From assembly GCF_011386835.1 (NCBI RefSeq), contig NC_088794.1, forward strand, positions 4,712,001-4,776,000: a stretch of 64,000 nt of DNA, in the 5' to 3' direction. The translations under genes were made by a program, and so were the position numbers. Origin of the DNA: Chrysemys picta bellii. Taxonomy: Eukaryota. A model generated the notes under the pieces. It had not been told where the DNA came from, made no database searches, and saw only the letters and a program-made list of their open reading frames with translations. Positions 1,755 through 64,000 of the stretch are shown piece by piece (the stretch's first letter is position 1; each line of letters starts with the position of its first letter).

Positions 1755-2028
1755 CCCCTCCTGTTGTTTTTGTCAATCTCTCTGCCAGGTCTTGCTGGTT
1801 TATAGCCCTCAGCACCTTCCTAGTCACCTCCACCCCATCGTCATCCTTGCAGCCACGGAGCAGCTCCTCAGTTAGGTCTCTGGGGTCTGCCACCTGCAGC
1901 GTGCTCCAGGGGATGTTTCCAGAGCCTTCTTGCAACTGAATTTCACTCCGTTTGGATGTAAATGTCTCAAACTCTTCTCCCAGGTCTTCCAGGGTTCCCA
2001 GCAGATGATCTCTCACCGTCTCCTCCAT
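1755..2028 (-). CDS. Pyrin domain (PYD) first coding exon of paralog C (divergent PYD)
   Basis: MEETVRDHLLGTLEDLGEEFETF...DLAERLTK. Acceptor tttgcag| with exon start at 2077 and donor G|gtaaga at 1755. 274 coding nt, phase 1. Confidence 0.85.
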
Positions 2029-12115: not shown

Positions 12116-15100
12116 TTAAAAAGACTCTGAGCTGTTTTTTTGTTTTATGTTAAATGCTTCCTCTAGGCTCTCTAGCGCCTGCTCCTTGGTTATTTTTTTC
12201 CAACCCTGCGGCAGATTTGCTGGCTTAGCCTTGTACTTCTTAGCAAACTTATAGTTGAACCTGTTAAAAACGAACTTCCAGTAGTCAGAAGTGTCGATGC
12301 TGGGATCGGGCTGGATGCGCCATTCTGGGTAATATCGTCGATAATCTTTATAGGGATGAAATTTCTCTTCCGTTTCTGAATTCCTAAATACAGCGTTGGA
12401 AACCACATCGGAAGAACACAAAGAGTACTCAAGCATTCCTGTCCGTTTGTTTTTGCACTGCCCTAATCCCTGAGGCCGATGGACTGTAGCAAAGTGTTCC
12501 GTATGATCCATGCCTCCTGCTTCACAGGGGACTTTACAGAACGGGCACTGCTTCCCGCAGCCCAACACGCAGTTGAAGATTTCATCCTGGGGCTTCATGG
12601 ACAGGTTGGAGAGTTTGGATTCAAATTTCAACTCTTCAAATTCAGCTAAGGTTTCTTTTTCCAGCTCGGGAAGGATGGCCTGAACGTGAGCCGAAAACTG
12701 TGCAGCATTTGCCGTGTTTTTAAACCGCACCACTGCTAGATGGTCCTTGGAAATCACCAAGTCTTTCTGTAACTCTCCACAAAAGGTGTCTAAAAAGTCA
12801 CAGACCGTGCTGGTGCTTTTGTCACGGAGAGACTCCAAAGCAGTCCTGACTTGTTTTATTACTGAGGACAGAATCTCTTTCTCCAGGTGTCGCAACCGCG
12901 CTGTCTGGCTGTAGCGATCTAGCAGGTGTCCTTCTACCCAGATTTTGACAAAACGTTCATAGTTATTAATGTATAGGATATAGGTGTCAAAGTTTTCATA
13001 TTTCAGCAGCTTCTTCAAGACAGTGAACTGGAAAAGGCTTCGGTTTGTATATTCATCATACTGTCCACTGTTGAGAATGTCATCGACTATTTTTAACCCA
13101 AGTCTATTGTTCACATAGTCCACCAGGGCAGGTTTGAGACACCAATGACAGAAATCCCTGGCTCTTGTTTGGCAGGAATCCTTCCCCAAATAAAGATCTT
13201 TAAATGTGGAGAGATACTGCGGTTTTAGTTTCTCCAGAAATAGTTCAGGATCGTTTTCTTTGATGAAGCTTGCTTGCATCTTCTCTAATAAAGGAACCAC
13301 TTCCCCCAAAATGTGAAGCTTCAGGTCAACTTTAAAGCAAGCGCTCGTGTGAAGTTCCTGAACGTCTGCCTCTTGAAGCCTCTCATTGATCATCCTCAAC
13401 AGATTTCTGCTGTAAATTTCATCATAATCTACTTCGCCGTCTGCTATATTTCTAATATAATCTTTGCACTGTTCCATTAATGATTTAACAAGTTCTTCTG
13501 TTTTATGCCAGCATTCCTGTGTGAACCATTCATTCAGGGTCTTAATCCATGGTAAATCTAAGTATTCCTTTTTCATAATGAAAGATTTTGTTCCATAATT
13601 CAATAAATTGCTGTATTCCTGTAGCTTTAGACTGGATGGATTCCCCTGCTTTGCCAGGTCCTCTCTCAGCAGCAACTCAATGTCTTGATAAATTTGCCTT
13701 TCATCCATACAGCCGAGCCGTATTTTTGACACTGTCTCACTCCACATTTCCTCAAACTCCATTTCCAGTTCCTTGTTGTCTGCTTTGTTCTCTCTCATTT
13801 TACAGTCTTCCAAAAGCATGTCCATTTCACCTTCAATTGTTTTTATGCACATAGCCTGAATCGTGTTTTTCTTTCGCCATCCTTTGCTGGCAGTCACCAG
13901 ATTGGAACAAATGGCACGTGAATAACTTGAACTGTGATGTGCAAACGGACGTGAATGCCTAACAAAATCTCCCATGTTCTTGTCTCTAACCGACTGCTTT
14001 ACTGCTGCACTTTGAATCCGCTCCCAAATCCTGTGCGATTCACAGCTCACTTTCTGCTGAGTCTCACTTGTTAAGTTGGTCAGGACACAAGCATCTAATT
14101 TAGCTGGAGGTTGATTCTGGAAGAAAGTTTGTTTTTCAGTTACCCACAGATTCATTTCCTTGCGGAACTCCCATTCCCATCCTACAGACTTTGCAGCTAT
14201 CTTGGTGTAGGCTTCAGTTGTGAAGGGGTTTCTAAAGCTGAAGAGGAAGTCATCATGTTTTAGAGCATTCCACAGACTCTTCACCCATTCGATAAATTGG
14301 GGAATGTCTTTGGGAATGGTGTTAAGTGAATGTTGTCTTACAAATTCAAACAAGCATTTCTTTAGCCCCCACACACTCTCACTGTACCCAGTGTTCACTG
14401 GTGCCATTGGAGGGTCCCCATGCCACTGGCTGGGGATGTACCAATTGTGTTTCTCAGGATCATGGTCCATAATGTCAGAAACCGTAATTTCTTTCTGTAG
14501 TTTTTCCATCTTTGCTGCAGCTACAGTCATTTCATTCAGCTGCTCCACAAGATATTTCTTGTCTCTCATGTTTTGTTCATATGCAGCTACATCATTGACG
14601 TTCTGATGCACAAATTGGCAGATGGGCATGTGCTCCGTTTCCTCCATTCTGAGAAAGGCATGGACCACAATTTGCAGAACATCCTGCATTTTGGTGGCGT
14701 TCTCCATGGCCAGGTTAACGATGGTTATGTCGCTCAGTCCAATCACCAGTGTGGCCAGCTCATTGTCATGTTGATAACTGTCCTCCAGTTTGGCCAGTTC
14801 AGGGGCTTTCAAGCCTTCTGTGTCTATTACAAGGATGAAATCACAGCCCAGTTCCTGCTGAAAGTTCTCTGCCACTTTAATGAGTGACATGAAGGCTCCT
14901 TGCGTACATCGGCCACCGCTCACTGCAAACTGCAGGCCGAACATGGTGTTGAGGAGGGTGGATTTCCCAGTGCTCTGCCCTCCCAGCACCGTTAAAACCA
15001 GCATTTTGGACTTTCCCCCCAGCTTGGCATGGAGCTCAGTCAGAACATCTGTCACCCACTGCAGTGGGATGTTGGATACATCTCCATCGATCAGCTCCAT

Positions 15101-16821
15101 GGGAAACCCTTCCAGCATCAGGTCAGCTGCTAACCTCGGGAAATGAATGAATTTCCTTTGAATTTTTCCCATTTTGCCTTCCTTCACCATTGAGTGTTCA
15201 GCCTCGTAGAACTGCCCCAACTCACGCAGGAAATGCTCCACTCCTAGGGAACTGGCAGAGATGGATTCATCCAGTTCTGGTAGCTTTTGTTCGTTAGGCT
15301 GCAAGTTAGGACGGTTCCCCTTAGCAATGCCATCTAAATTAAATTTCATGCATTTCAGGAAGTAGCGTATTTCCATTTGAGATAGTGTTCCTATTCCACT
15401 GATAAATTTAGTCAAACCATCAGTAAGGTCACATTTATTCTGCTGTGTACGGAACTCCAACAATTTCTCTTTCAGCCTAGATTTATATTCTTCTGTGGGG
15501 ACGTCCCCTTGTCCTTTCAATCTGCACATTTCTCTTTCCACGTTGCTTAAGCTCTTCCACAGGTCCCCTTGCAGTTGCAGTGTTTGCCTCTTGTAATTTC
15601 CAATATCTTTTATTTCTGCCGTGATTTCTTTAACGCGGTTCTTTGCTCTCTGACATTCCTCACAGTCCTCATCCAGATGGATTGAAAGTTCACGTGCGGT
15701 CACAGCCATGCCTTCCATATTCATGTCCTTGTGATGATCGTTCATTATACTTCCTATAGCAGAGCACAACTTTTCCATGAATTCCTCTTTCTTGGTCCCG
15801 ATTTCTTTCTCTAGGACATGCTGTTTACTCAGTTTCAGCACTGGTGCTAATTTATTAAGGAATTCCTGAGTTTCACTCTGTTTGCCAGACTCGTAATTGA
15901 GGATGAAGTAGTATTTAGTGGCTGATCCCTGCAGAGATGATAAGAGCGTGTATTGTCTCTCACTGATGCTCTCAGTAACTATGAACACTGCAGAGGAGAT
16001 CTCTGTTAAAAAGCTGAACTGTAGCCAGTGGGACTCAATATCTCCGCGCAGATTTGTAACCGCGACGGGCTCTGGGAAAAGATCTGAATCCTCATTTCCA
16101 GCAGGGAAATACCAGGAAATCTCGACCAGCCCATCTGCGATTTCCCGAGGGACGTTCCCAGACTCCATGTCCCGATGGATGAAGAAATCATGGTGCTGCT
16201 GGGAGGGGCTGAGAACCTCATTGAGGAGTTTGGACTTGGAGAAGTTGCAGCTCCCCATCCGCACAAAGGAAATGGTTGGCATTGCTGTGAGCACCAGGCT
16301 CTCCTCTCTGAACCCTCTGCTCTCTGCCAGGGAGTGCGGCCTCCACTTTCTCACAATGTCCCTCATGGCCCACAGCATTAGGGTGCACTTGGGGGTGTCG
16401 AGGGCAGGTAGCAGCAGAGGGAGGGCAAACTGGCACATGGACATTTTGGACAGGATCTCCTGCTGTAGGAAACTGTCTGAGCAAAGCAGAACGGCGCAGA
16501 GAACATCGAGGGGGTGCAGAGAAGCTCTAGCGTCCATGTTGCTATAATGAAGAACATTGCCACCATCGCCTTGTCCCCCATTGTCGTCACTGCTTGCTTT
16601 GTCAGCAGATGCTCCCTGCCCAAAGCTTGTGTTTCTGGCGGTCCCATTCAAAGCTATGACCTTCCTCAGAAAATGCCACGGTAAATCCCCTAATGCCCGA
16701 GGAGTCCAGTTCTGTAGACTTTCTGGGTTGATTTCCTGGAGTTCTCTCAACCCCAGCTTCGTGCTTCTGTGCTTCTCCATCTTCAGCTTGGACAGGAGGT
16801 CCTGGAGTGCTCTCCTTCTCT
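12116..16821 (-). CDS. URGCP/VLIG-type very large GTPase exon, gene A terminal exon
   Basis: Uninterrupted ORF over 1550 aa. URGCP-like N-region (KMSMCQFALPLLLP, REIADGLVEISWYFP), P-loop GGQSTGKS, GRCT, DTEG, FVHQN, and C-terminal CGKQCPFCKVPC motif. Acceptor ctttctgcag| at 16821, phase 1. Confidence 0.93.
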
Positions 16822-20447: not shown

Positions 20448-20724
20448 CATTTCCTGTTGCCTTGGCGAGTTTCTCTGCTAAATCCCTCTCGTTTATTGAT
20501 TTCAGCGCCTCCACGGTCACCTCCACCGCGTAATATCCTTCGTAGCAGCTGATCAGCTTGTCAGTGAGGTCAATGACATCCACTTTCTTCAGTGTCCCAC
20601 GGCCGATATGTTCATATCCCTCCTTCAGTGGCATTTCGTGCAGTTTGAACTTGAACTTCTTGAGCTCATCTTCCCCCAGGTCTTCCAGGGTCAGCAGCAG
20701 ATGATCTCTCAGGGTCTTCGCCAT
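20448..20724 (-). CDS. PYD first coding exon of gene A (ASC-like PYD)
   Basis: MAKTLRDHLLLTLEDLGEDELKKFKFKLHEMPLKEGYEHIGRGTL...DLTDKLISCY. Donor G|gtaagt, 277 nt, phase 1. Acceptor with exon start at 20787. Confidence 0.92.
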
Positions 20725-30315: not shown

Positions 30316-30592
30316 ATGGAGAAGACTGTGACCGATCTCCTGCTGGAGACCCTGGAAGAGCTGGGGAAAGATGACCTCAAGCGATTCAAGTGGAAGCTGA
30401 AGGAAATCAAGGTGGAAAACCAGTATAACAACATCCCCTGGGGCAAGCTGGAGACAGCACGTCCTGTGGATGTCGCCAAGGAATTGCTCAACTACTACGG
30501 GGAGCACTACAGGGTGGAGGTGACCATTCAAGTGCTGAGATCCATCCACCGGAGAGACCTGACAGACAGACTCACCAAGGCAACACAAGCTG
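30316..30592 (+). CDS. PYD first coding exon of gene B
   Basis: MEKTVTDLLLETLEELGKDDLKRFKWKLKEI...IPWGKLETARPVDVA. Acceptor ccctag| with exon start at 30306, donor G|gtaagg. 277 nt, phase 1. Confidence 0.92.
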
Positions 30593-31719
30593 GTAAGGGA
30601 GTGACCAAGTTCCTTCCCCATACGTAGGCTCCCATGGGCTTTGGGATTCTGCTGCAGGATCTAAGCATCATTGTTGCAAAAATATCACAGATCTAGCCTT
30701 TATAATGGCTTAAAAATATGAACTGTGTGTGGCGATGTCTGCCCGAATCTGCAGACAACCTGGAACAAGAGCATTGAGATTCATCTCAAAGCTGCTGGTG
30801 AATCCTGATGTCTGAACCCTAATGACAGAATGCCAACATTGTTAACTCTTTAGGTGCTGATAATTTAAGGAGAAACATCCAGCGAATCCCACAATCCTTC
30901 ATTACCTCTTACCACCGTAGAAGCCCCCCGGGTCCCTTTCCCAGCTGCCGAAATCTGCAACAGCATCTGCAGTGCAGTTGTGTGATTTCAAGGCAAAGTT
31001 ATGCGGCATATTGAAAACTAAGACTTATAGGGCAGTGTGAGATGCACTGAACTGAATATCAGATAAAATCGCCCAGGAATTACAATATTGATTGTGTTAT
31101 TCATTTATGCATTTAAGTCAATGAAACGCCTCTGTTTTTAAGAAGCTATTGGATCGCTAGTTTGCAATACCAGAGAACCACAGAACTTGAGGGACCTTGC
31201 TGCAGAATTTAGGCCACAGAATATAAGGGACCCTGGCTTACAATTGGACACCCAGCTGCACCACCTCTGCAGTTTTACAAGCTATTGTCAGATCCTTCTT
31301 AACTACTGCACTAGCAGCTGAAAGCCAACTGGGCCAAGTAATCCACCATCTGTGCAGTCTCCTCCACACAGCCAATGACATTGTTGTATGCAGATTAGCT
31401 GTAGAGTAAGGGTGCTGATTGGCTGAGCTACCTCTGACATCACAACTGCCTAAAACTTCTGGCATGGCATAGCTACATGCCTTGCTTTTGTGCAGGTGTA
31501 ATTTGTAAAGTCAAAATGGCTGTGACTTAAAAATTGGACAGTACCAATCCGTGAAACCCAGCGGTGATTGGTAATAGTCTGAACAGAAAGTGCTCTGGCT
31601 TCAGAGTGACGCACAGACAGAGACAATCCTGGAATCTTCTCATATAGATAATCCTACCTTCCAAGGAAACTTGCAAAGGAATAAAATTGGGCATGTGCCC
31701 TTTTTTTGGTGCTTTACGA

Positions 31720-32600
31720 GCCTTGTTTTGAACACAAGTTCCCTTTTAGGAGGGATGTTGAAAAATTGGAGAGGTACAGAGAAGAGCCACAAAAATGAGT
31801 AAAGGGCTAGAAAATATGTCTTGCAGCGAGAGACTTATGGAGCATAATCTGATTATTTTATCAAAAAGAAGATCCTAAGGTGACTTGAGGACAGTGGGGA
31901 GGAAATATCAGGTACTAAATGGCTCTTTAACCTAGCAATGAAAGGCAGAACTAGACCTAATGGATTCGAAGTTAAAACCAGATATATTCTAATCAGAAAT
32001 AAGGCACCATTTTTGTTGGGGGGTGGGTGATTAACCATTGGAACTAATTCCCCTGAGAAGTGGTGGATTCTCCATCCTTTGATGGTGTCCAATCCTGCCT
32101 GGATGTCTTTCTAAAAAATGCTTTAGTCAAACACAAGTTACTGGGCTCAGTGCAGGGGTAACTGGGTGAAATTCTCAGGCCTGTGTTACACAGGAGGTCA
32201 GACTAGATCAGGGATCAGCAACCTTTGGCACGCAGCTAGCCAGAGTAAGCACCCTGGCGGGCCAGGCCGGTTTGTTTACCTGCCCCATCCGCAGGTTCTG
32301 CCGATCACGGCTCCCACTGGCAGCGGTTCGACGCTCCAGGCCAATGGGGGCTGCAGGAAGCGGCGTAGGCTGAGGGATTTGCTGGCTGGCGCTTCCCACT
32401 GCCCCCATTGGCCTGGAGCGGTGAACCGCGGCCAGTGGGAGCCACGATCGGCAGAACTTGCAGACGCAGAAGGTAAGCAAACCAGCCCAGCCCGCCAGGG
32501 TGCTTACCCTGGGGAGCCGCATGCCAAAAGTTGCCAATCCCTGGACTAGATCATTTGACGGTCTCTTCTGGCCTCAAACTCTGTGAATCTAAGAAAAAAA
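31720..32600 (+). mobile_element. Degraded CR1 3' fragment interrupted by a hAT MITE
   Basis: CR1 C-terminal and UTR motifs on both sides of 32209-32543. Confidence 0.7.
32209..32543. mobile_element. Charlie-type hAT MITE
   Basis: cagggatcagcaac ... gttgccaatccctg with a perfect 8-bp TSD GACTAGAT. Confidence 0.9.
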
Positions 32601-32744
32601 TCCTCTCCTCTAAAAAGGCACACAACGTGTTTGCTGGCTTATTGGCAAGCCACATATATACATGTTTTGGGCAGGTCAGCACCCAGCCTCATTACGATAC
32701 ATTTGGGAGCTGGAATGAGGAGCAGGAAATAAGACTGAAAATCA

Positions 32745-33260
32745 TTGACTCATAGAAATGTCAGGCTGGAAGGGACCTCGAGAGGTCATCTACTCCAGCC
32801 CCCTGCGCTGAGGCAGGACCAGGTAAACCTAGGCCAACCCTGAGAGGTGTTTGTCCAACCTGTTCTTAAAAATCTCCAGTGATGGGGATTCCACAACCTA
32901 CCTTGGAAGCCTGGTTCAGAGCTTAACCGCCCTTAGAGTTAGAAAGTTTTCCCTGATATCTAACCTAGCTCTACCATGCTGCAGATTAAGTCTGTTACAT
33001 CTTGTCCTACCCTCAGTGGACATGGAGAGCAACTGATCACTGTCCTCTTTATAACAGCCCTGAACATATCTCAAGACTGTTATCAGGTCCCGCCTCGGTC
33101 TTCTTTTCTCAAGACTAAACGTGCCCAGTGTTTTTAATCTTTCCTTATAGGTCAGGTTGCTCTCCACTTTCTCCAGTTTATCCACATCTTTCCTTAAGCA
33201 TGGCACCCAGAATTGGACACCGTGCCGAGTAGAGCAGGACCATTACTTCCCATGTCGGAC
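32745..33260 (-). mobile_element. CR1 3' fragment
   Basis: tcatagaaatgtcaggctggaagggacc tail; the 32916-33206 minus translation is the CR1 ORF2 end. Confidence 0.9.
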
Positions 33261-33276
33261 ATACAACACACCGACC

Positions 33277-34414
33277 TGTTCATACACCTGTGGCGCTTTG
33301 GGGCTTCACCCAGATCAGGATTGGATTCTGTCAATGTTGCCCTGGAACCCCGGGTGCCTCCTGCTGTGTAGCTTTAGCTCTGAGCCCTGATGCCAGCCAT
33401 GTGTCCACCGCACAAAAGTCTCACCCTGAGCTACTGCCAGCCCAGTTACTCCTTGCAGGTTGACCCCCAATGCCCCCCTCTGTCCTGAATCTCCCCCAAA
33501 CTGTCTCCCCTGTCATGTTCCTCTCACTGGACACTCAGAGTTAACACCACATTCGCTGCCTCCCGAGCCAGGGCACACCACAGCTTGTTAGCTCAGCGGG
33601 GGTGATACACTCCACCTTAATGCACTACCCTGAGACAATCTGATGTAAAACTAAGGCTAAGTTGATTAACAAAGAACATAGATTGATGTGATTTCAAGCC
33701 AGAGTAAAAGGGGCATGAAAGGGTTACAAAGCAAAACACGCTTTCGAATGTCAAAACTGAATTGTAGCAAGATATAGCTTCGACTATTATTATTGTTACG
33801 TCAATTTGTCAGCTTTCTTCAGGCCTGTTTTAGCAGGAGGACCCATTTTGCACGAATACAAAGCATGGCTTCTTCGTTCTCTCAGGTGATGGATTCCTCA
33901 AAGTTGTTCAGCAGTTCCTAATATCCCCAAATTTTATCTTTGTCTTAAAAGTTAGGAAGCACTCCCGGGGGCTCAGCTTTCTAGGTCCACCAGGGAGCGG
34001 ACACCAGGTAAATTTTCTCCTGTGATTTACAATGCAAATGATCCTCCTGAAATCTCCCATGCAAATGAATAACCCATGGACCCTTTCTCTGGTCACACCT
34101 AGTTTGATCTGCAATTGAGCGCAAGAGATGTTTGCCCTTCCCCTGCTTTGACTTATTTGTCCGTTTATAGACTCCAAATAGTAATATCAGAGAATGCCCA
34201 TCATTTCACAAACAGCACTGTTGCATAGATTTCACACTGATATTAATGATCAGCATGTTATTAGTTTTCAAATGATATACTACAAGACACCTTTTAAATG
34301 AATATCATGACAACAGTGTGTGAGGTTTATGAGCTGGTCAGGCCAGCTAAGACTTATGGTTACATACCAGGAGCACCTTGCCGTCTGGCATTGGGGTGCT
34401 CTTAGGGTCATAAC
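33277..34414 (-). mobile_element. LTR (Gypsy-like) inserted into CR1
   Basis: Ends ...gggtcataaca and splits the CR1 pieces at 32745-33260 and 34415-34725. Boundaries approximate. Confidence 0.55.
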
Positions 34415-34725
34415 ACCCCAGAATGATATTAGTCTTTTTTGCAACTGCATCATATTTGTTGACTCATATTCAATTTGTGATCCGCTCTAACCCCCAGATC
34501 CTTTTCTGCAGTACTGCTGCCTAGACAGTTATTCCTCATTTTGTAGTTGTGCATTTGATTTTTCCTTCCTAAGTGAAGTACTTTGCACTTGTCTTTATTG
34601 AATTTCACCTTGTTGATTTCAGACCAGTTCTCCAAGTTGTCAAGGTTGTTTTGAATTCTAATCCTGTCCTCCAAAGTGCTTGCAACCCCTCCCAGCTTGG
34701 TGTCATTTGCGAACGTTATAAGCAT
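34415..34725 (-). mobile_element. CR1 RT fragment
   Basis: FANDTKLGGVA...FNKDKCKVLHLG translation. Confidence 0.9.
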
Positions 34726-35219
34726 GATGCGTGCATCCTTCAGCAACATTGAAAGGCACAGTAAAAAATCTAGGGGCGGGCAAAGGGAATGTTCCGCTTC
34801 ATTCCCTGCACCTGATTCGCTGCCTCTATGACAATACTAAGTTTCTGACCTGGGTTTACTTCACTCCAGCAGCTGGGACTAGGGTGGAAATATTTCTGCC
34901 GTTCTGGCTGCTCAACACATATGGTGGGACTGGTCGGCAGCCCGCCAATGCAGCTCCAGAGACAGGCAAATGGGATGCACCATATGAGTGGGTGGAGGAA
35001 GCGGGAGCAGGCAGGCTCCTACCATGGATGAACGGGGGCAAGAGAAACAGGAAACCCCACATAAAAAATAGGGGGTTCAAAAAATGGCGGAGGCCAAGTG
35101 GAAGAATGTGTGCTGTGATTGGTGGAAACGCATCACAGAGAGGGACGGGGAAGTTCAGGAAGGGGAGAGAGAGAAGGAGAATAGGCCATTTGCACAATAA
35201 GAAGGAACAGGGATCCAGA

Positions 35220-35341
35220 GCTTTCTCTGTGTGTGTAAAAAGAAGAACAGGAGTACTTGTGGCACCTTAGAGACTAACAAATTTATTAGAGCATAAGCTT
35301 TCGTGGACTACAGCCCACTTCTGTGTGTGTGTGTGTGTGTG
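35220..35341. repeat. Penelope end fragment plus (TG)n microsatellite
   Basis: agaagaacaggagtacttgtggcaccttagagac... followed by tgtgtgtg. Confidence 0.75.
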
Positions 35342-35429
35342 AGGATTAGCTAAACAGGTGGGAGCCTCCATATCAAAGAGAGTTGTTGATTAGGTACCAA
35401 TAACACATTTTCTCTATATTTCTTGCTAG

Positions 35430-35546
35430 ATGTTTTAAATCTGGAGCTGGAATCAATGACGCCACAAAACCCAGAGCCAGGGGAGACAGATGGGTCCAAT
35501 CTGGAGCAAGAATCCAATATGCAGCGGATGCCAGCCTCTTTCAAAA
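35430..35546 (+). CDS. Linker exon (117 nt, phase 1-1) of gene B
   Basis: tttcttgctag|ATGTTTTAAAT...TTCAAAA|gtactg, encoding DVLNLELESMTPQNPEPGETDGSNLEQESNMQRMPASFK. Its start resembles the gene A linker acceptor. Confidence 0.7.
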
Positions 35547-37175
35547 GTACTGTCTCTTATAACCCTTCCTTCTGTACTTGCAGTTGACGCACTGTAGTAA
35601 TGAACATGTCACTGAGTTTTATTAATTTGCATTACAACACAAGGGGGACAATACGCTGTCTCTTACCTGCTTGGAATCTCCCTTCTCAAGCTTAGTGGTG
35701 TGGATAGACCTGGCAGCTATTAATCTTGTGCCGGAGACATCACCAGACTAAAACTTGTCTATGGGCTTGAAGGCAGCATTGCTTCATATTGAATGGCAGG
35801 AGAATCTAGTCATTGGGCCAGGCTAGGTCTGCTAACTCCATACAAGGAGAAAGAGAGAGACCATTGAGCCACGAGAAAGAGGCTTGGGCCCAAATTGTCA
35901 AAGCGGATGTCCAAACTAGCTGTGAGTGCTCAGAACACGGTGGAAAATTAAGTCCCAGGTATCTCCGAGTGACAGCTAGACCTAGGTGTGTCAAGTAGAA
36001 AGACACCAAAAACTAGTGGGCAAGTTTGAAAATGTTGGCGTGAGTCTCTAGAGATGAAGACGATGCTACACTGATCTTTGCGCTCAAGCTGAGAGAATAA
36101 TTGATTGTTTTGGTTCGGCCCTTAAAATCATTTAATTTTGGGTTGAAAACACCTGAAAATAAAACACCAAAAGCTCTACTCTGTGCAGCTATTATATAAG
36201 CCAGTTCATAGCCAAGGCACAGAGGGAGCAAACAGGAATAATAAAGATGGAAAGGGGGAAAAACAATTAAATTTGTTGACATTGAGGAATGGCATAGACT
36301 GAATGAAAACCAAGCGGTTATTTAAAAGACCAGGGAATGGAAATTTTCAAAGATACAAATGGGAGCTAGGCGTTCAATTCCGTGGACTATGAATGGGGAT
36401 TGGGTGCCCCGCTGCAATTTATACTTTTGCAATAATCTATGCTGAAAAGTGACTCTGTAAAAAAATTGTGTCGTATGGCTGCATGTTTAATGTGGGTGAA
36501 TTCTTTTGAAATCAAGCATTTACACACTTCCAAGAAAAAGGACGATTTCTCTGACTTCTCTCCTTGTGGGCTCAGAAAATTTGAGGCCAGAAGAGATCAT
36601 TTTGATCCTCTAGTCTGGTCTCTGACAGAACCCAGGCCAGAGAATTTGATCCGGTGATTCTTGCATCCAGCTCATACCTTATGGTTGAGTTACAGCAGGT
36701 CTGACCTGGGGAAGCTGGGTTCTTACTTTCTCCATCATTAGTTTTAAAGATTCTGCACGCCAAATTCTGCCCCCAGTGTCCCTCTCACCGACTCTGCTAT
36801 CACCCATCCTGCCCTTGGTGACCCCCTCATGGTCCTCTCTGCCTTCCCACCCTGCCCTCTGTAATTGATTGGCACCTATAAGCCGTACTAATGTTGCATA
36901 AAAAGGACTCTAACCCAGCTCCCCAATTCATAGCTACGCTGGTTCTGCTGGGCCGGAAAGAAAGATTTTACTTTTGTCCCTAAAGTCAGAAGATCTGTTG
37001 AGTAAAAACAGGCTGTGTAGACAAAGTCACCTCTCGGAGTGAAGCATATTCCGTTGCCAGCCTGTGACGTTAACTGCTGTTCATTTTGTTCCCATCGCTG
37101 CCCCAACCTCCAAAGGATCAATTCCATTTAAAACCATTTCTTCACCACTGCAATATCCTCTTTGTCTTTCCACAG

Positions 37176-40100
37176 AGCGGAGGAGAACATTCCAGGGCAC
37201 CCTGTTCAAGCTGAAACTGAAGAAGTACAGAAGCAGGAAGCTCACATTACGTGACCTCCAGAAAATCGGCCCGGAAAGTCTAAAGGAGTGGACGGCTCAG
37301 ACCTTAGGGGACTTACCGTGGTATTTCCTGAGGAAGGTGATGGCTCTGAATGGGACGACCAGAAACACAAGCCTTGGCCAGGGGGAGCTTGAAGATGAAG
37401 CAGTCAGTGAGGATGAGGAGGAACTGGATATTGAGGATGATTTTTTTTCTCTTAATGACACTTGCACTAGTGATTCCCTGCACCCCCTCGATCTTCTCTG
37501 TGCTGTGCTGCTTTGCTCGGACAGTTTCCTACAGCAGGAGATCCTGTCCAGAATGTCCATGTGCCAGTTTGCCCTCCCTCTGCTGCTACCCGCCCTCGAC
37601 ACCCCCAAGTGCACCCTAATGCTGTGGGCCATGAGGGACATTGTGAGGAAGTGGAGGCCGCACTCCCTGGCAGAGAGCAGAGGGTTCAGAGAGGAGAGCC
37701 TGGTGCTCACAGCAATGCCAACCATTTCCTTTGTGCGGATGGGGAGCTGCAGCTTCTCCAAGTCCCAACTCCTCAATGAGGTTCTCAGCCCCTCCCAGCA
37801 GTACCACGATTTCTTCATCCATCGGGACATGGAGTCTGGGAACATCCCTCGGGAAATCGCAGATGGGCTGGTCGAGATTTCCTGGTATTTTCCTAATGGG
37901 AGCAAGAATTCAGATCTTTTCCCAGAACCCATTGCGGTTACAAATCTGCACGGAGACATTGAGTCGCACCAGCTGCAGTTCAGCTTTTTAATGAAGGTAT
38001 CAACTCTTATGATCATATTTGTTGAAAGACTCAGTGAAAGGGAATATGTTCTTCTATTGTCTCTGAAGGAAGCAGGCACAAAAGTGTATTTTATGCTCAG
38101 TTCTGAGGCTGAGAAATCAAAGGACATGTTGGGCTTCCTTAAAAAGCTAGTTCTGGATCTGAAACTGAGTAAATCACACCTATTGTTCAAACAGAGCACA
38201 ACTAACCAGGCACAGCTTGTGAAAAAGCTGCGCTCTACCATTGGAAGAATCACAAAGTTTCCTCAGAGGCGCGTGACTATGGAAGACATGGCTGAGACGG
38301 CTCGGGAACTAGGAATCCAGGTAGATGAGGACTGCGAAGAATGTCAGCGCGCCAGCAAGTGCGTTAAAGAAATCACTGCGGAAATAAAAGACGTGGCAAA
38401 GTACAAGAGGGAAATGCTGAGACTGCAAGGGGATCTCGGGAAGACTGTGGCTAAAGTGGAAAAAGAGCTGTGTCGAATACGGAAACCAAGGACAGCCCAC
38501 TTAGAGAAATATGAATCTGAGTTGAAAGAAAAATTGGTGGCATTACACAAAGAAAAGAATCAGTGGGACCTTACTGATGGTTTGGTTCAATTTATCAGTG
38601 GGATAGCATGTCTCTCCCAAGTGGAAAGATGTTATTTCCTGAAATGGATGAAGCTTAGCCTGGATCACATTACAAGGGGGAATCTTACTAGCTTACAAGC
38701 AGAGTATAAAGAGAAATGTAAAACTTCAGAGAGCGACCCACAAGAGCTATCAGAACTCGGTAAAATAATCTCGGCCAGATCCTTAGGGTCTGAGCATTTC
38801 ATGCGTGAGTTGGGGCAATTCTACGAGGCTGAACATTCAAGGGTGAAACAAAGCAAAATAACAGAAAGCCAAAGACAATTCATCCATCTTCCAGGCATAG
38901 CAGCTGACCTGATGCTGGAAGGGTTTCCCATGGAGCTGATCGATGGAGATGTATCCAACATCCCACTGCAGTGGGTGACAGATGTTCTGACTCAGCTCCA
39001 TGCCAAGCTGGGGGGAAGGTCCAGAACGCTGGTTCTAACGGTACTGGGAGGGCAGAGCACTGGGAAATCCACCCTCCTCAACACCATGTTCGGCCTGCAG
39101 TTTGCAGTGAGCAGTGGCCGATGTACACGAGGAGTCTTCATGTCACTCATTAAAGTGGCAGAGAACTTTCAGCAGGAGCTGGGCTGTGATTTCATCCTGG
39201 TGATAGACACAGAAGGCCTGAAATCCCCTGAACTGGCCAGGCTGGAGGATAGTTATGAACACGACAATGAGCTGGCCACCCTGGTGGTTGGACTGAGTGA
39301 CATAACCATTGTTAACATGGCCATGGAGAACGCCACCGAAATGAAGTATGTTCTGCAAATTGTGGTCCATGCCTTTCTGAGAATGGAGGAAATCGGGCAC
39401 AAACCCAACTGCCAGTTTGTGCATCAGAACGTCAGTGATGTGTCTGCGCATGAACAAAACATGAGGGACAGGAAAAACCTCCTGGAGCAGCTGGATGAAA
39501 TGACCAAAGCTGCAGCAAAGATGGAGACGCAAATCAAGGAAATGGCAATTTCGGATATTATGGACTATGATCCAGAGAAACACAACTGGTACATCCCTGG
39601 GCTGTGGCATGGAGTCCCTCCCATTGCTCCAGTCAACATAGGATACAGTGAGAGGGTGTGTGAGTTAAAGAATTACCTGTTTGACTTTACAAAATCTTGC
39701 TCGGCTAACAGATCCCTTAAGGACATCCCCCAGTTTACTGAAAGGCTGAGAAGCCTGTGGAACACTATAAAACATGAACATTTCAGCTTTAGCTTCAAAA
39801 GCAGGTTTGTAGATGAAGTCTATAACCAGCTGTCTATGAATTATGCAGAGTGGGAATGGGGTTTCCGCAAAGAGATGCATCTGTGGGTATCTGAAAAAGA
39901 AACTTTCATCCTCAACCAGCCAGCAGCAGACCTAAATTTCTCTGTCTTTAAAAACATAGCACTGGAAAAACTGCAGTATGGTGAGCAAAAGATCATGGAC
40001 TGCTTACAACAATATTTTGCAAGGAAGGCCTCAGACCTGCACCTAATGGAAAAGTACAAAGAAGATTTTATAAGGAGCACTAAAACACTCAAGAATGACC

Positions 40101-41482
40101 TTAAAACCCACGTGTTCAGCAAATGCGAAGAAGCCATTCTTACTCAAATAGGCAGGCTGAAGTCACACGACATACACATTAACTACATGAAAATTATTGA
40201 AGGGGAAATCGATCAGTTATTGGCAAACTGCAGGAGGAGCACACAGCAACTAGATGACAAGAAACTGGAGTCCAAATTTGAAACAGTATGTCACGAAACA
40301 TCACTCTGTCCTCTGCAGAACTGCCAAGTTGAGGGAGATATGGAGGCCCAGTTGAGAAAGGACCTGATGAATCGAAGGAGTGCCATCACAGAGATGCTAC
40401 AAGGAGCAGGAAGCCTGAAGGATTACAGAATGAACTCATTCAAGATGAAATCTAAGTATTTGGAAAAATGGCTGATACAAAGAGCAGGGTTGCACAAAGA
40501 TAGTTACCTTCAAAAAGCAAAAGCTATTGCTAAATCACTGATGGATCAGTGCCAGGATTACATTCAAGAAAAGGTCATTTCCAAAACAGACTATGACAAA
40601 ACCTACTGCAGGGAATTGCTGCGCATGATCAATGAGAGGCTCCAAGAGGTGGATGTTCGGAAATGTTATACTAATGCATTCTTCGAAGTTGACCTGAAGC
40701 TTCACGTTCTGGGGGAAGCGGCTCATGAGTTTCAAAAGATGCATGAAGTATTTATCCAGGAACACAATCCCCAGAAACATCTGGAGAAGTTTAAACCTCA
40801 GTACTTCTCCCGATTCAAAGATCTTTATTTAGGGAAGGATTCCTGCCAAAAGAGGGCCAGGGATTTCTGTGAACATTGTCTCAAACCTGCCCTGGTGGAC
40901 TACGTTAAGAAAAGAATCACAATAGAAATAGTGGATGACTTCCTCAGCAGTGGGCAGGCCATTAAATATGGCTGCAAGATCTTTTTCCAGTTTACCGTGG
41001 AGAAGAAGCTCCTGGAAGATGGGAACTTCAACAACTATCTGAATTACATTAACAGCTATGAAGAGTTTGTCCAAAGCTGGATCCACAGACACCTGTTAGA
41101 TTACTATAACAAGACTGATGGCTTGGTAGTCCCGGAAAGAGAGATTCTAGCCACAATAGTAAACAAAGTGAGAGGAGTTTTGGAACACACCAAGGACATA
41201 AAGCCTAACTCGGTCTCTGCTTTCTTAGATGACTTTTGCAAAGCACTGGAGCAGGATCTGGTCATTTCCAAGGACAGCTTAGTGGGGATACTGTTCAAAA
41301 ACACAGCAATGGCCCAGCAATTTTCTGCAGACATTCAGACCTTGCTGCCTGACCTGGAACAGCAAATCTTATCTGAATTTAAGGAGCTGGAGCTGGAGTC
41401 AAAACTCTCCAACCTGCCATTGAAGCCTCAGGATGAGATGTTCAAGCAAGTTTCTGGATTTGCAGAAGCCTCCATTCCCTGA
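37176..41482 (+). CDS. URGCP/VLIG-type very large GTPase exon, gene B terminal exon (C-terminally shortened)
   Basis: Acceptor ctttccacag| at 37176, phase 1, homologous to gene A (ERRR..Q..L.KLK). Intact GGQSTGKS, GRCT and DTEG. The ORF ends about 150 aa earlier than A. Confidence 0.9.
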
Positions 41483-41823
41483 GGCTCCCAGAGAAGCAAG
41501 AGAGAGATAAATTCCTTGTAGTAGGATTTTGGTATAAATGGGAGTCCGAAATGGCAATATTGCCACAGGAAAGAAACTGGGCAGTAAAGAGCAGAAGCCA
41601 CTCTGACAATGATGCTATGGGTCAGTCTAAACAACTGTCTTAAATGCTTAAATGATCTACTCGCGGGTTGGCTAGGGTTAGACAGACTGAGCAGGGTCTA
41701 GGGATGGAGATAGAGTGACCTGCTTGACATGAACTCTGTTGGTGCCTGCTCAATCAAATAAACGGCTACAAAGAATGTCATACTCAGCCTGTCAGTTTGC
41801 TGGGTCCCCAAAATATCCTTTCA

Positions 41824-42000
41824 AATCATAGAATGTCAGGGTTGGAAGGGACCTCAGGTCATCTAGTCCAACCCGCTGCTTAAAGCAGGACCAATCCCCA
41901 GACAGTTTTTTGCCTCAGATCCCTAAATGGCCCCCTCTAGGATTGAACTCACAACCCTGGGTTTAGCAGGCCAATGCTCAAAACACTGAGCTATCCCTCC
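41824..42000 (-). mobile_element. Near full-length tortoise-type tRNA-derived PolIII SINE
   Basis: ggagggatagctcagtg...gagttcaatcc A/B boxes, plus CR1-derived tail (ctatgatt). Confidence 0.9.
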
Positions 42001-42272
42001 TCCCTGGCCCTGTGGGATGAATATAGGACAGAGGGTGTGCATGGGCGTGCATGGGTTGGTAGCTCCAGACAAAAGAGCCCACAATGAGCAGGCCCTCATG
42101 TAGCAAAGCATCTGAGAACCACCCTGAAGCCTGGGAGGGACAGAGCAGCCGAATGGGGATGTCCCAGGATGGGAGCCAGGACGAGCGCTGTGCCAGGGAG
42201 GAATCACCTGAGAAGGACAAACCAGAGTTGGATCCAAGATCACTGCTGCCCGCAGCTGTATGGGGCCGTGAG

Positions 42273-58042: not shown

Positions 58043-58972
58043 TCATTTCACCCCTAAAGTCACTTTTCTGCTCCCTAATTTTCTCATGGCATTTTTCACC
58101 TCCTTATTGCGCAGGGTGTAGATCAAGGGATTCAGCACCGGAGTGATAATGGTGTAGAACACGGTGACCATCTTATCCTCTGAGAAGGTGATGGAAGGTC
58201 TTAAATACATGAAGATACATGGCCCGAAAAATATAATCACTACAGCAATATGGGAGGCACAGGTGGAAAGAGCTTTGCGACGACCTTCGGAGGAGCGAGT
58301 TCTCAAGGAGACTAAGATGATGACATAGGATACAACCAGCACAACAAAACAGGTCAGAGAAATCATCCCGGTATTGGCAATGACCATGACGCCAACAAGG
58401 TAAGTGTCAGTGCAGGTCAGTTTCAGCAAAGGGTGCACATCGCAGAAATAGTGGTCAATCTCGTTGGGCCCACAGAAGGGTAACTGGATGGTCAGGAGAG
58501 TCTGAACGATGGAATGCACAAAGCCACCCACCCATGAAGCCATCACAAGTGAGCCACAAACACACCCAGTCATTATGGTTGTGTAATGGAGGGGTTTGCA
58601 GATTGCAATGTAACGATCGTACGCCATCACTGTGAGGAGGAAGATTTCAGTGCACCCAAAGAAATGGAACACAAACAGCTGTGCTATGCAGCCATCAAAG
58701 GAGATGGTTTTCCTCTCCACAAAGAAGTCTGTAATCAGTTTTGGGGCTGTGACAGAGGAAAGGCACATGTCTACAAAGGACAGATAGCTGAGGAAGAAAT
58801 ACATGGGAGACTTCAGATACTGGCTGCTCTTAACAGTGACAATGATGAGAAGATTTCCCAGCACAGTCGCGATATAGAGGAGTACAAAGAACACAAAACA
58901 CACTGGCTGTAACATCTCATTGTGGCAAAGTCCCAAAAGGATGAATTCAGTCACATTCTGCGTGGCCTCCAT
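58043..58972 (-). CDS. Olfactory receptor, class II family-4-like, intact single exon, 309 aa
   Basis: N-glycosylation [49 protein letters not shown] motifs. Upstream acceptor near 59016. Confidence 0.97.
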
Positions 58973-62989: not shown

Positions 62990-64000
62990 AAGATGAGGCT
63001 GGGGCCTTTCCAAAGGTGAAGGGGCCTGAGGTATGATACCCCAAACTGCTCCTAGGTCTGATGACCCATGCCTTGGTGGGGGTCTGTGTGTGCTAGCTCT
63101 GTGCCACTGGTGAGTGGCCCCATCAAATGGAAGAGGTGAGCACAGAATCCACATGTCCAAGATGGTGGGGAGGGTAAAGGAATCTGCTTCGCCTCCCGCT
63201 GAATAGACACAAGGCCCAGAGTGGTCCTTTGTGGCAGCCCTAAGTGAATAATCCACCCAAACCCCTATTTCTGCCGACTGAGCATGAGCTAAAAGCCAAC
63301 GAGCTGTGAAGTTACAGCAGAAATATTTAAAGTGAATCATAAAGAGTAGCATGTCATTGCCTTGAGTAATGAGTTCCCAGAGGCATTTCAAGGTGTCGCC
63401 ATTGGAAGCAACAGTGAAGAGGTAGCTAAGCCATATTGCTTTGGACACATCTTTCAGGCAAACGTTTGGTGCGTGTTGACAGTTAAGCCCAGATTTTTAG
63501 GCATTTCTCCACTCGGCATTACAAGGGCTAAGGGATTTAGGTACACTGCCTTTTCAGGTTCTAAGCAGCCTAAGTCAGACTGAGACTTAGGCATCTAAGT
63601 GTCTAAATCACTTTTGAAAATGGGATTCAGCAATCTAAGTCACTCCGGCCTTGTGATACGGAGTGGAACAGCATCTAAATACCTTTACAAATTCGGTCTT
63701 TAGTCCCTTTAGTGGTTCTGTGCCTCACACTTACAATTAGATGTTTTACCAACAGCTTGTGCTATAGGTTTGAGGCCTTTCTATCTGATACATGGTTCAT
63801 ATCTGGTTCATTCTATCGACACCTTCCTACATAACAAGACATTGCAGGAACTCCTGTGTCAAAATCTTCAGTTGTCTCCTAATGCTCCGGAAGGGGGATC
63901 TTGAGAAGAGTAGCAATGGAGAGTTAGCCCTCTAGGAAATGGTGGGCATGAACAGCCATCGCTCCTAACTAGAGCTGTGTAAATAGATTTTTCAGTTCAC
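62990..64000 (+). pseudogene. Second diverged copy of the L-like decayed coding sequence, interrupted by a small repeat (~63480-63720)
   Basis: Homologous blocks 63305-63420 vs 60790-60905 and 63800-63950 vs 61065-61225, with synonymous-biased differences. Confidence 0.5.

What the first reader, a model, noticed from the sequence alone, without database searches (positions are those of the whole stretch)
30316..41482. Head-to-head paralog B: open GTPase but selectively decayed Cys-rich C-terminus
Seen: the same three-exon, phase-1 design (30316-30592, 35430-35546, 37176-41482; about 1566 aa), divergently oriented from gene A. The ORF stops at VSGFAEASIP*. In a shifted frame the next bases read PFPEAPREA versus PFCKVPCEA in A, so the tail is frameshifted and eroded with its cysteines lost, while about 1430 upstream codons stay fully open. 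Inference: B has been maintained for a long time as a tail-less variant rather than being a fresh pseudogene. It parallels the shorter mammalian URGCP and may be a regulator or a sensor with different specificity.
Basis: partly seen in the sequence, partly recalled or inferred. Interest (0 to 1): 0.7.

Follow-up and report, generated by a model that had tools for sequence, protein, structure and literature searches.

The report
Old tail-less turtle immune GTPase gene
A painted-turtle gene for a giant immune GTPase with a pyrin domain lost its highly conserved cysteine-rich end before the main hard-shelled turtle lineages split, and selection has kept the shortened gene intact in most of them, so it is a working short form and not a dying gene.

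Summary
Gene B has three coding exons (30316-30592, 35430-35546, 37176-41482), GT/AG splice sites and phase 1 throughout. It ends at ...VSGFAEASIP*, and a shifted frame then reads PFPEAPREA.

B is already annotated: it equals RefSeq XP_065450237.1 (1566 aa) of Chrysemys picta bellii. The missing part is the Pfam domain GVIN1_C (PF26772), about 147 aa with invariant Cys/His. 113 of 120 family hits carry the full domain.

- Protein models of 1563-1568 aa in ten other turtle species, from Emydidae, Geoemydidae, Testudinidae, Chelydridae and Cheloniidae, end at the same residues.
- In six of these species the DNA shows the same TGA, the same shifted remnant and the same AATAAA.
- dN/dS is 0.21-0.28 in pairs and 0.35 by ML. 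omega=1 is rejected (2dlnL 175), along the whole ORF.
- No GVIN1_C remnant or exon lies downstream.
- Contigs from two DNA data sets match exactly, and an RNA contig from another turtle reads through the stop into the 3'UTR.

New nuances:
- Only 31 nt of the tail are still recognisable.
- The post-stop stretch is a conserved 3'UTR.
- A and B share gene-conversion-like tracts.
- B is a real pseudogene in Caretta and Eretmochelys.

The function of the tail-less form is inferred only. The scan's other note on this stretch is this same finding.

The parts
30316..30592 (+). B exon 1: start codon and pyrin (PYD) domain, 92 codons plus 1 nt
   Evidence: Pfam PYRIN PF02758 E=1.2e-24. Donor GT at 30593. 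95-97% amino-acid identity in six other turtles, dN/dS 0.31.
35430..35546 (+). B exon 2: 117-nt linker exon, phase 1 to phase 1
   Evidence: AG/GT boundaries. The peptide is contained in XP_065450237.1.
37176..41482 (+). B exon 3: URGCP, URGCP_GTPase and GVIN1 helical region, 1434 codons plus TGA
   Evidence: Pfam PF25496 E=6e-125 and PF25683 E=5.7e-197, the latter matching the full profile 1-396/396. ORF open. dN/dS 0.18-0.38 in every 150-codon window.
39047..39073 (+). G1 P-loop GGQSTGKST. The G3-like DTEG lies at 39206-39217.
   Evidence: Read from the translation. Identical motifs are present in A.
41447..41482 (+). Derived C-terminus QVSGFAEASIP plus TGA, replacing the family's RVFGCGKQCPFC
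   Evidence: The same end occurs in 11 species; Macrochelys has AEAPIP.
41472..41510 (+). Shifted-frame remnant of the GVIN1_C start (PFPEAPREARER), ending at TAA 41508-41510
   Evidence: 21/31 nt identical to A 12545-12515 with a net 2-nt loss in B, p about 0.006-0.015. Conserved in all seven species, with one variable site.
41483..41775 (+). 3'UTR with AATAAA at 41757-41762
   Evidence: Aligned in seven turtles. Mean distance 0.058, against 0.091 for the intron and 0.133 for dS. The X15 RNA contig ends at 41755 and the X4 contig at 41772.
12119..12580 (-). Gene A's intact GVIN1_C tail, the part B lacks, given for comparison
   Evidence: Precomputed Pfam PF26772 GVIN1_C on A orthologs. Invariant C8 C12 C15 C19 H29 H34 C55. 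dN/dS 0.35.
20455..20724 (-). Gene A's PYD exon, 9.6 kb from B's ATG in divergent orientation
   Evidence: tblastn 46% identity to B's PYD. Pfam PYRIN E=5.3e-25.

Best explanation
B is a functional, expressed member of the very-large-inducible-GTPase (VLIG; URGCP/GVIN1) family. Its architecture is PYD, URGCP_N/URGCP, URGCP_GTPase and the GVIN1 helical domain. It lost the terminal GVIN1_C module (about 147 aa, with conserved Cys/His) through a small frameshifting deletion at the very start of that module. The rest of the module's coding sequence was then lost or decayed. This happened before Testudinoidea, Chelydridae and Cheloniidae split. That split is on the order of 100 million years old by published turtle timescales, which I did not test here. 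Since then the shortened gene, its stop codon and its new 3'UTR and polyA signal have been kept under purifying selection in most lineages. In Carettini sea turtles the gene was later lost by real pseudogenisation. These steps are shown: gene structure, domain content, loss of GVIN1_C, age and fixation of the truncation, selective constraint, and transcript evidence. How it works is inferred. It probably still binds and hydrolyses GTP and self-assembles through its G domain as other large immune GTPases do, and it probably signals through PYD-PYD contacts, for example with ASC. Without the tail module, whatever the tail does in its relatives (docking to a target or cofactor, or self-restraint) is absent. 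B would then act either as a sensor/effector with altered targeting, or as a partner that co-assembles with tail-bearing neighbours such as A and modifies their output.
For: Gene model and domains. Identity to RefSeq XP_065450237.1. Precomputed Pfam on B orthologs lists PYRIN, URGCP_N, URGCP, URGCP_GTPase, RHD3_GTPase and GVIN1 but never GVIN1_C, whereas A orthologs list GVIN1_C. 113 of 120 family hits have a full tail. The same C-terminal residues occur in 11 species. The same TGA, shifted remnant and AATAAA occur in seven genomes. Exon-3 ORFs of 1433-1434 codons differ by only one 1-codon indel. Pairwise dN/dS is 0.21-0.28; most upper bootstrap limits are 0.40 or below, and the one exception (0.52) is the barely diverged Chelonia-Natator pair. 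All sliding windows give 0.18-0.38, and the last 84 codons give 0.23. ML omega is 0.35, and omega=1 is worse by 87.4 lnL units. The B gene tree follows turtle phylogeny. A profile HMM built from 113 tails finds nothing in six frames of the 6 kb downstream in seven species, and tblastn finds nothing up to window position 64000. Reads: DNA contigs are identical across the stop. RNA contigs from another turtle cover exon 3 only, with zero depth in the intron at 36900-37076 and beyond 42033, and one contig runs unspliced from 40611 to 41755.
Against: No functional data exist for B or for GVIN1_C, and the tail's fold has no solved relative, so the consequence of losing it is unknown. The expression evidence consists of assembled contigs from another species, not raw reads of this species, so no level, tissue or induction is known. 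B was dispensable in Caretta and Eretmochelys. No B-clade protein appeared from Pelodiscus, Carettochelys, Emydura or Pelusios, so the gene may be restricted to one turtle subgroup. Conversion-like tracts covering about 770 nt could help keep parts of the ORF intact.
Confidence: 0.85

Rival explanations
1. B is a slowly decaying pseudogene. The tail was the first part to go, and the long ORF is open only by chance or because the lesion is recent.
For: The family evolves by birth and death. B is indeed broken in Caretta and Eretmochelys. Single-species tail truncations occur elsewhere in the family.
Against: The truncation is shared by five turtle families. There are 1434 open codons in seven genomes with a single in-frame indel. 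omega=1 is rejected with 2dlnL 174.7. The Carettini copies show what real decay looks like after far less time: frameshifts and three stops.
Confidence: 0.03
2. The premature stop is an assembly or annotation artefact, or a downstream exon, readthrough or programmed frameshift restores the GVIN1_C tail.
For: There is a 2-nt frame difference from A just before the stop.
Against: Contigs from two DNA data sets are identical. The same TGA is present in six other genomes. The shifted frame itself stops after 12 codons, at 41508-41510. No GVIN1_C-like coding sequence exists within 6 kb downstream in seven species or within 22 kb in the window. An RNA contig passes unspliced through the stop to the polyA signal. 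All listed RefSeq isoforms end in AEASIP.
Confidence: 0.02
3. The ORF is kept open mainly by repeated gene conversion from intact tail-bearing paralogs, not by selection on B's own function.
For: Two tracts, 37478-37897 and 38888-39232, are 94-96% identical to A at the nucleotide level with dS about 0.05, against 0.5-2 elsewhere. The same stretches have very high k-mer depth in genomic runs.
Against: The tracts cover under 20% of exon 3. The C-terminal 590 codons are far from every paralog (dS to A above 0.7, long private stem of 0.46) yet have dN/dS 0.18-0.32 among B orthologs. B orthologs form one clade that follows the species tree. Conversion has never restored the tail.
Confidence: 0.05
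4. On mechanism: B is not a sensor or effector of its own but a dominant modulator. It co-assembles through the G domain or PYD with tail-bearing PYD-VLIGs such as neighbour A and damps or redirects them, as PYD-only and CARD-only proteins do for inflammasomes.
For: B lies next to A in divergent orientation, 9.6 kb apart, so the two might be co-regulated. The G-domain core is kept nearly identical to A's. B has lost the most conserved module of the family.
Against: A pure modulator would not need about 1430 constrained codons, including an intact P-loop and a full-length GTPase profile match. The PYDs of A and B are only 46% identical. There are no interaction data.
Confidence: 0.3

Closest known systems
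GVIN1 / VLIG-1 (interferon-induced very large GTPase 1), including the human GVIN1 reported to form a coat around Burkholderia thailandensis (bioRxiv 10.1101/2025.03.24.645074)
   Same: B has the same family domains (URGCP_N, URGCP, URGCP_GTPase, GVIN1 helical region), an intact P-loop, and a large single coding exon.
   Different: B has one G-domain unit and an N-terminal PYD, and it lacks the terminal GVIN1_C module that 113 of 120 reptile and amphibian relatives carry. No coat formation or interferon induction has been shown for B.
Gene A of the same window and its orthologs (PYD-VLIG with intact tail; for example Trachemys XP model P0114, Lepidochelys P0115)
   Same: Same three-coding-exon, phase-1 design, a PYD, 59% identity over 1407 residues, and divergent neighbours.
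   Different: A keeps GVIN1_C under constraint (tail dN/dS 0.35). The A/B similarity is mosaic, and in the C-terminal third B is no closer to A (47-49%) than to CARD-type paralogs (56%).
Mammalian URGCP (up-regulator of cell proliferation)
   Same: Same family by Pfam (the URGCP and URGCP_GTPase models are named after it), and it is also shorter than GVIN1-type relatives.
   Different: From my own knowledge, not tested here, human URGCP is about 930 aa and ends soon after the G domain. It therefore lacks the whole GVIN1 helical region and has no PYD, whereas B lacks only the last roughly 147 aa.
PYD-only and CARD-only proteins (POPs/COPs) as truncated inflammasome regulators (reviewed in PMC7555848 and PMC3775265; only titles and abstracts were seen)
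   Same: A conserved truncated paralog of a death-fold signalling protein that could modulate full-length relatives.
   Different: POPs and COPs keep only the death-fold domain. B keeps everything except the last module. The resemblance is a functional analogy only.

Membership tests
VLIG / URGCP-GVIN1 large GTPase family | URGCP-like domain (PF25496) followed by a URGCP-like GTPase domain (PF25683) | tested here: met
   E=6e-125 (profile 1-299/299) and E=5.7e-197 (profile 1-396/396), both far above the curated cut-offs.
VLIG / URGCP-GVIN1 large GTPase family | Intact nucleotide-binding motifs (P-loop GxxxxGKS/T; DxxG) | tested here: met
   GGQSTGKST at 39047-39073 and DTEG at 39206-39217, both identical in A. 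GTP binding itself was not tested.
VLIG / URGCP-GVIN1 large GTPase family | GVIN1 helical domain (PF25974) after the G domain | tested here: met
   Precomputed Pfam on the B orthologs and on P0001. The local Pfam copy lacks this model.
VLIG / URGCP-GVIN1 large GTPase family | C-terminal GVIN1_C module (PF26772) with invariant Cys/His | tested here: not met
   No blastp match to A's tail in any B ortholog. PF26772 is absent from their precomputed domain lists. The HMM of 113 tails finds nothing downstream. The feature is usual but not universal in the family, so B remains a member that has lost a domain.
PYD-containing (inflammasome-type) signalling proteins | N-terminal PAAD/DAPIN/pyrin death-fold domain | tested here: met
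   PF02758 E=1.2e-24, profile 2-75/76. Conserved across turtles with dN/dS 0.31.
PYD-containing (inflammasome-type) signalling proteins | PYD-PYD recruitment of ASC or another adaptor | not testable with these tools
   Needs speck or co-immunoprecipitation assays.
Unitary pseudogene | Frameshifts or stops inside the former ORF and dN/dS near 1 | tested here: not met
   Not met in Chrysemys, Chelonia, Natator, Macrochelys, Gopherus, Mauremys and Pangshura. Met only in Caretta and Eretmochelys.
Interferon-inducible GTPases (functional class) | Induction by interferon or infection | not tested
   Only assembled RNA contigs were available. There was no condition-resolved expression.

The most novel reading that the evidence does not exclude
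GVIN1_C, the best-conserved module of the giant immune GTPases and one with no solved structural relative, is a self-restraining or cofactor-docking zinc module. On this reading B is a natural 'uncaged' PYD-VLIG kept for about 100 million years, either as a constitutively assembly-competent inflammasome seed or as a decoy for pathogen factors that attack the tail. It would then be a ready-made natural deletion mutant for working out what the tail does in GVIN1-type coat formation.
Probability: 0.15. Interest if true: 0.7.

Novelty: new variant of a known kind. Interest (0 to 1): 0.42.

Why it matters
Giant VLIG/GVIN1 GTPases have only just been given a cell-autonomous defence function, coat formation on bacteria (bioRxiv 10.1101/2025.03.24.645074). 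Nothing in the searched literature addresses their C-terminal Cys/His module. This gene shows that a family member can lose that module and still be kept by selection across five turtle families. Evolution has therefore provided a deletion mutant with an intact tail-bearing neighbour (A) as a built-in control. It also joins the growing set of PYD- or CARD-fused large GTPases in reptiles, which may link pathogen coating to inflammasome signalling. The gene itself is already in RefSeq, so what is new is the reading of its architecture and history, not its existence.

Tried and rejected
(1) An unrestricted local DNA alignment of B's post-junction 355 nt against A's tail gave a score no better than shuffles (829/1000 reached it). 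A global alignment with free ends was uninformative. Only the position-limited test gave p of about 0.01.

(2) I looked for a displaced or decayed tail in three ways. tblastn at E up to 100 found only noise. blastn with word size 7 found nothing beyond position 41445. A profile HMM on six frames of 6 kb in seven species had a best E of 0.08, on the wrong strand and in one species.

(3) The fold of GVIN1_C could not be identified. The model is confident (pLDDT 84), but Foldseek against the PDB gave no hit below E=3.8, and VIA wide gave no chain with Z of 2 or more. No function could be read from structure.

(4) The local Pfam copy has no model for the tail, so the name GVIN1_C comes from precomputed annotations.

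(5) Literature searches for VLIG/URGCP with PYD, turtles or tail domains found nothing relevant. The GVIN1 paper mentions a 'C-terminal domain' without a function.

(6) P0116 (Macrochelys A-type) had no gene on record.

(7) My first regular-expression scan for the Cys motif was too strict and was replaced by blastp.

(8) The whole-length tree put B as sister to the PYD-A clade. I do not rely on this, because the C-terminal-only tree leaves B unresolved and conversion tracts bias the whole-length tree.

(9) The run X17 (polyA RNA) did not cover the stop region and is uninformative there.

Exons were searched by reference one at a time, and the joined step was left out.


Full report
**What is there**

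The window carries two divergently oriented genes of the very-large-inducible-GTPase family.

- Exon 1, 30316-30592: ATG at 30316, donor GT at 30593.
- Exon 2, 35430-35546: AG before it, GT after it.
- Exon 3, 37176-41482: AG before it, TGA at 41480-41482.
- All junctions are in phase 1.

Exon 1 is a pyrin domain (PF02758, E=1.2e-24). Exon 3 holds a full URGCP domain (E=6e-125) and a full URGCP-like GTPase domain (E=5.7e-197, profile 1-396 of 396). The P-loop GGQSTGKST is intact at 39047-39073 and DTEG at 39206-39217. The exon-3 ORF is open for 1434 codons and ends ...KPQDEMFKQVSGFAEASIP*.

Exon 3 translates exactly to RefSeq XP_065450237.1, 'up-regulator of cell proliferation-like isoform X1' of Chrysemys picta bellii (1566 aa). 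That protein also contains the exon-1 and exon-2 peptides. So the window is painted turtle, and the gene model is already public.

**What is missing**

Gene A (12116-16780, minus strand) aligns to B at 59% identity over A residues 1-1407. A's last 147 residues have no counterpart anywhere else in the window. Precomputed Pfam annotation names this tail GVIN1_C (PF26772). It is listed for A orthologs and never for B orthologs.

Among the 120 best family hits from reptiles and amphibians, 113 have the full tail. An alignment of 42 tails shows 74% mean column identity, with invariant C8, C12, C15, C19, H29, H34 and C55. This makes the tail the best-conserved part of these proteins, and it looks metal-binding; that last point is an inference.

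AlphaFold2 folds the tail with confidence (pLDDT 84). Neither Foldseek nor VIA-align finds any solved relative.

**How the tail ends in B**

In-frame homology to A stops at 41445. B then reads QVSGFAEASIP where the family has RVFGCGKQCPFC.

From 41472, a frame shifted by a net 2-nt loss reads PFPEAPREARER and stops at TAA 41508-41510. Against A, 21 of 31 nt match. A position-limited test gives p of about 0.006-0.015, while an unrestricted alignment is not significant. The remnant is therefore probably real but short.

Beyond it nothing is left. A profile HMM built from 113 tails finds nothing in six frames of the 6 kb downstream of the stop in seven turtle genomes, and tblastn finds nothing up to position 64000.

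What follows the stop is a 3'UTR of about 290 nt with AATAAA at 41757-41762. This UTR is more conserved among turtles (mean distance 0.058) than the upstream intron (0.091) or synonymous sites (0.133). The phrase 'frameshifted and eroded' therefore describes the first 31 nt only. The rest was deleted, or had decayed beyond recognition, before the living lineages split. I cannot tell which.

**Is the stop real and fixed?**

Contigs from two DNA data sets (coded organisms A and B, different studies) cover 39595-41847 and 39595-41772 with no differences. One of them may be the sample the window was assembled from.

Stronger evidence comes from other species. Annotated proteins of 1563-1568 aa end in the same residues in these turtles:
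- Trachemys and Malaclemys
- two Gopherus species
- two Mauremys species
- Pangshura
- Macrochelys (AEAPIP)
- Chelonia and Natator

I fetched the DNA of six of them (L001-L006). All have the TGA at the same place, the same shifted remnant and the same polyA signal.

**Selection**

The seven exon-3 ORFs have 1433-1434 codons and differ in length by one codon.
- Nei-Gojobori dN/dS is 0.21-0.28 for all 21 pairs. Most upper bootstrap limits are 0.40 or below; the one exception (0.52) is the barely diverged Chelonia-Natator pair.
- Every 150-codon window lies between 0.18 and 0.38. The last 84 codons before the stop give 0.23.
- A Goldman-Yang codon model gives omega 0.35. Fixing omega at 1 costs 87.4 log-likelihood units, so 2dlnL is 174.7 with 1 degree of freedom.
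- The ML tree of B follows accepted turtle relationships, as expected for orthologs.
- The PYD exon has dN/dS 0.31.
- For comparison, A and its orthologs give 0.34-0.39 overall and 0.35 in the tail.

B is therefore at least as constrained as its intact neighbour.

**Expression**

All available runs were assembled contigs, so they give no expression levels.

In a gut metatranscriptome of another turtle (about 4% different from the window), contigs tile 37309-41755. Depth is zero in the intron stretch 36900-37076 and beyond 42033. One 1141-nt contig runs unspliced from 40611 through the stop to 41755, just before AATAAA.

In run X4, labelled 'DNA?', one contig starts exactly at the exon-3 acceptor 37176 and another ends at 41772. 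This suggests the run contains RNA. It is suggestive, not proof.

**Age and relatives**

The B clade is well supported, with a long stem: 0.31 in the whole-length tree and 0.46 in the C-terminal tree.

In the whole-length tree B is sister to the PYD-bearing A-type clades. With only the C-terminal 590 residues its position is unresolved. In that region B is closer to CARD-type paralogs (56%) than to A types (47-49%).

The reason is mosaicism. A and B are 96% identical at the nucleotide level over 37478-37897 and about 94% over 38888-39232, with dS about 0.05, against 0.5-2 elsewhere. The same stretches have 50-100 times the k-mer depth in genomic runs. They are shared by many paralogs, most simply through gene conversion. 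Conversion has not restored the tail.

No B-clade protein appeared from Pelodiscus, Carettochelys, Emydura or Pelusios, although their other paralogs did. The truncation therefore predates the split of Testudinoidea from Chelydridae plus Cheloniidae, which is roughly 100 million years old by published timescales that I did not test. Its upper bound is open.

**Not universal**

The Caretta and Eretmochelys gene models are fragments. Their DNA (L009, L010) shows the following lesions:
- Both share a 19-nt deletion at exon-3 codon 1356.
- Eretmochelys has a 1-nt deletion at codon 77.
- Caretta has a 1-nt deletion at codon 373.
- Caretta has stops at codons 432, 597 and 1097.

B is therefore a true pseudogene in that sea-turtle tribe. 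This shows that the gene can be dispensed with. By contrast, it also shows that the intact ORFs elsewhere are not open by inertia.

**Mechanism**

These steps are shown: architecture, loss of one module, age, constraint, and likely transcription.

The rest is inferred. B probably still cycles GTP and self-assembles, and it probably signals through its PYD. Without GVIN1_C it lacks whatever targeting, cofactor docking or self-restraint that module provides. My preferred reading is a sensor or effector with altered targeting or regulation. A modulator that co-assembles with tail-bearing neighbours is the main alternative, at about 0.3. Neither can be decided with these tools.

**Comparison and novelty**

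B is a member of the VLIG/URGCP-GVIN1 family that fails one usual, but not universal, family feature.

The parallel with mammalian URGCP is loose. From my own knowledge, URGCP ends soon after the G domain.

Single-species tail truncations also occur in gene models of Heteronotia (a PYD form), Gekko, Rhinatrema and Ambystoma. None of these is shown to be conserved.

I found no paper on the tail module or on PYD-VLIG fusions in reptiles. The earlier scan note on gene A (s1-329877) agrees that these PYD-VLIG genes are already in public gene lists.

**Verdict**

This is a real, already annotated gene whose tail-less state is ancient and selected. It is a new variant of a known kind. It is of moderate interest as a natural domain-deletion experiment in a family that is only now being understood.

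Noticed in passing
window 37478-37897 and 38888-39232 (B) versus the matching parts of A: A and B are 94-96% identical at the nucleotide level here, with dS about 0.05, against dS 0.5-2 elsewhere. The same stretches have 50-100 times the k-mer depth in genomic runs. This looks like gene conversion or family-wide homogenisation around the URGCP core and the P-loop.
   Followed up: partly
L009 (Eretmochelys) and L010 (Caretta), exon 3 of the B ortholog: Both share a 19-nt deletion at codon 1356. Eretmochelys also has a 1-nt deletion at codon 77, and Caretta has a 1-nt deletion at codon 373 plus stops at codons 432, 597 and 1097. B is a pseudogene in these sea turtles.
   Followed up: yes
L011 (Chrysemys CM062321.1, 5.32 Mb) versus window 20524-49321: A second Chrysemys copy of B (XP_065447301.1, 21 amino-acid differences in exon 3, same truncated end) lies in a block colinear with the window at about 98% identity over at least 29 kb. 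This is either a recent segmental duplication or a retained haplotig.
   Followed up: partly
window 1762-2028, minus strand: A third pyrin-domain exon, 47% identical to B's PYD. The rest of its gene would lie beyond the window's left end.
   Followed up: no
window 41824-42005: A SINE-like repeat (GGGTTGGAAGGGACCTCAGG...TCTAGTCCAACC) with depth in the hundred-thousands in all runs. At this site it is present only in Testudinoidea (Chrysemys, Gopherus, Mauremys, Pangshura) and absent in Chelonia, Natator and Macrochelys.
   Followed up: partly
window 12119-12580, minus strand (A's GVIN1_C tail): This is the most conserved module of the family, with invariant C8 C12 C15 C19 H29 H34 C55. It folds confidently (pLDDT 84) but has no solved structural relative by Foldseek or VIA-align.
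   Followed up: yes
proteins P0094 (Heteronotia, PYD form), P0062 (Gekko), P0096 (Rhinatrema), P0117 (Ambystoma): Other family members have models that break off inside or just before GVIN1_C at different points. These may be independent tail losses or annotation faults. Each is seen in one species only.
   Followed up: no
window 37176 and 41772, run X4: In a run labelled 'DNA?', one contig starts exactly at B's exon-3 acceptor and another ends 10 nt after AATAAA. The run probably contains RNA.
   Followed up: no
window 58043-58972, minus strand: A 309-aa ORF. In Gopherus the stretch downstream of B carries 309-aa 7tm_4 olfactory-receptor genes, so this is probably the same kind of gene. I did not scan it.
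   Followed up: no
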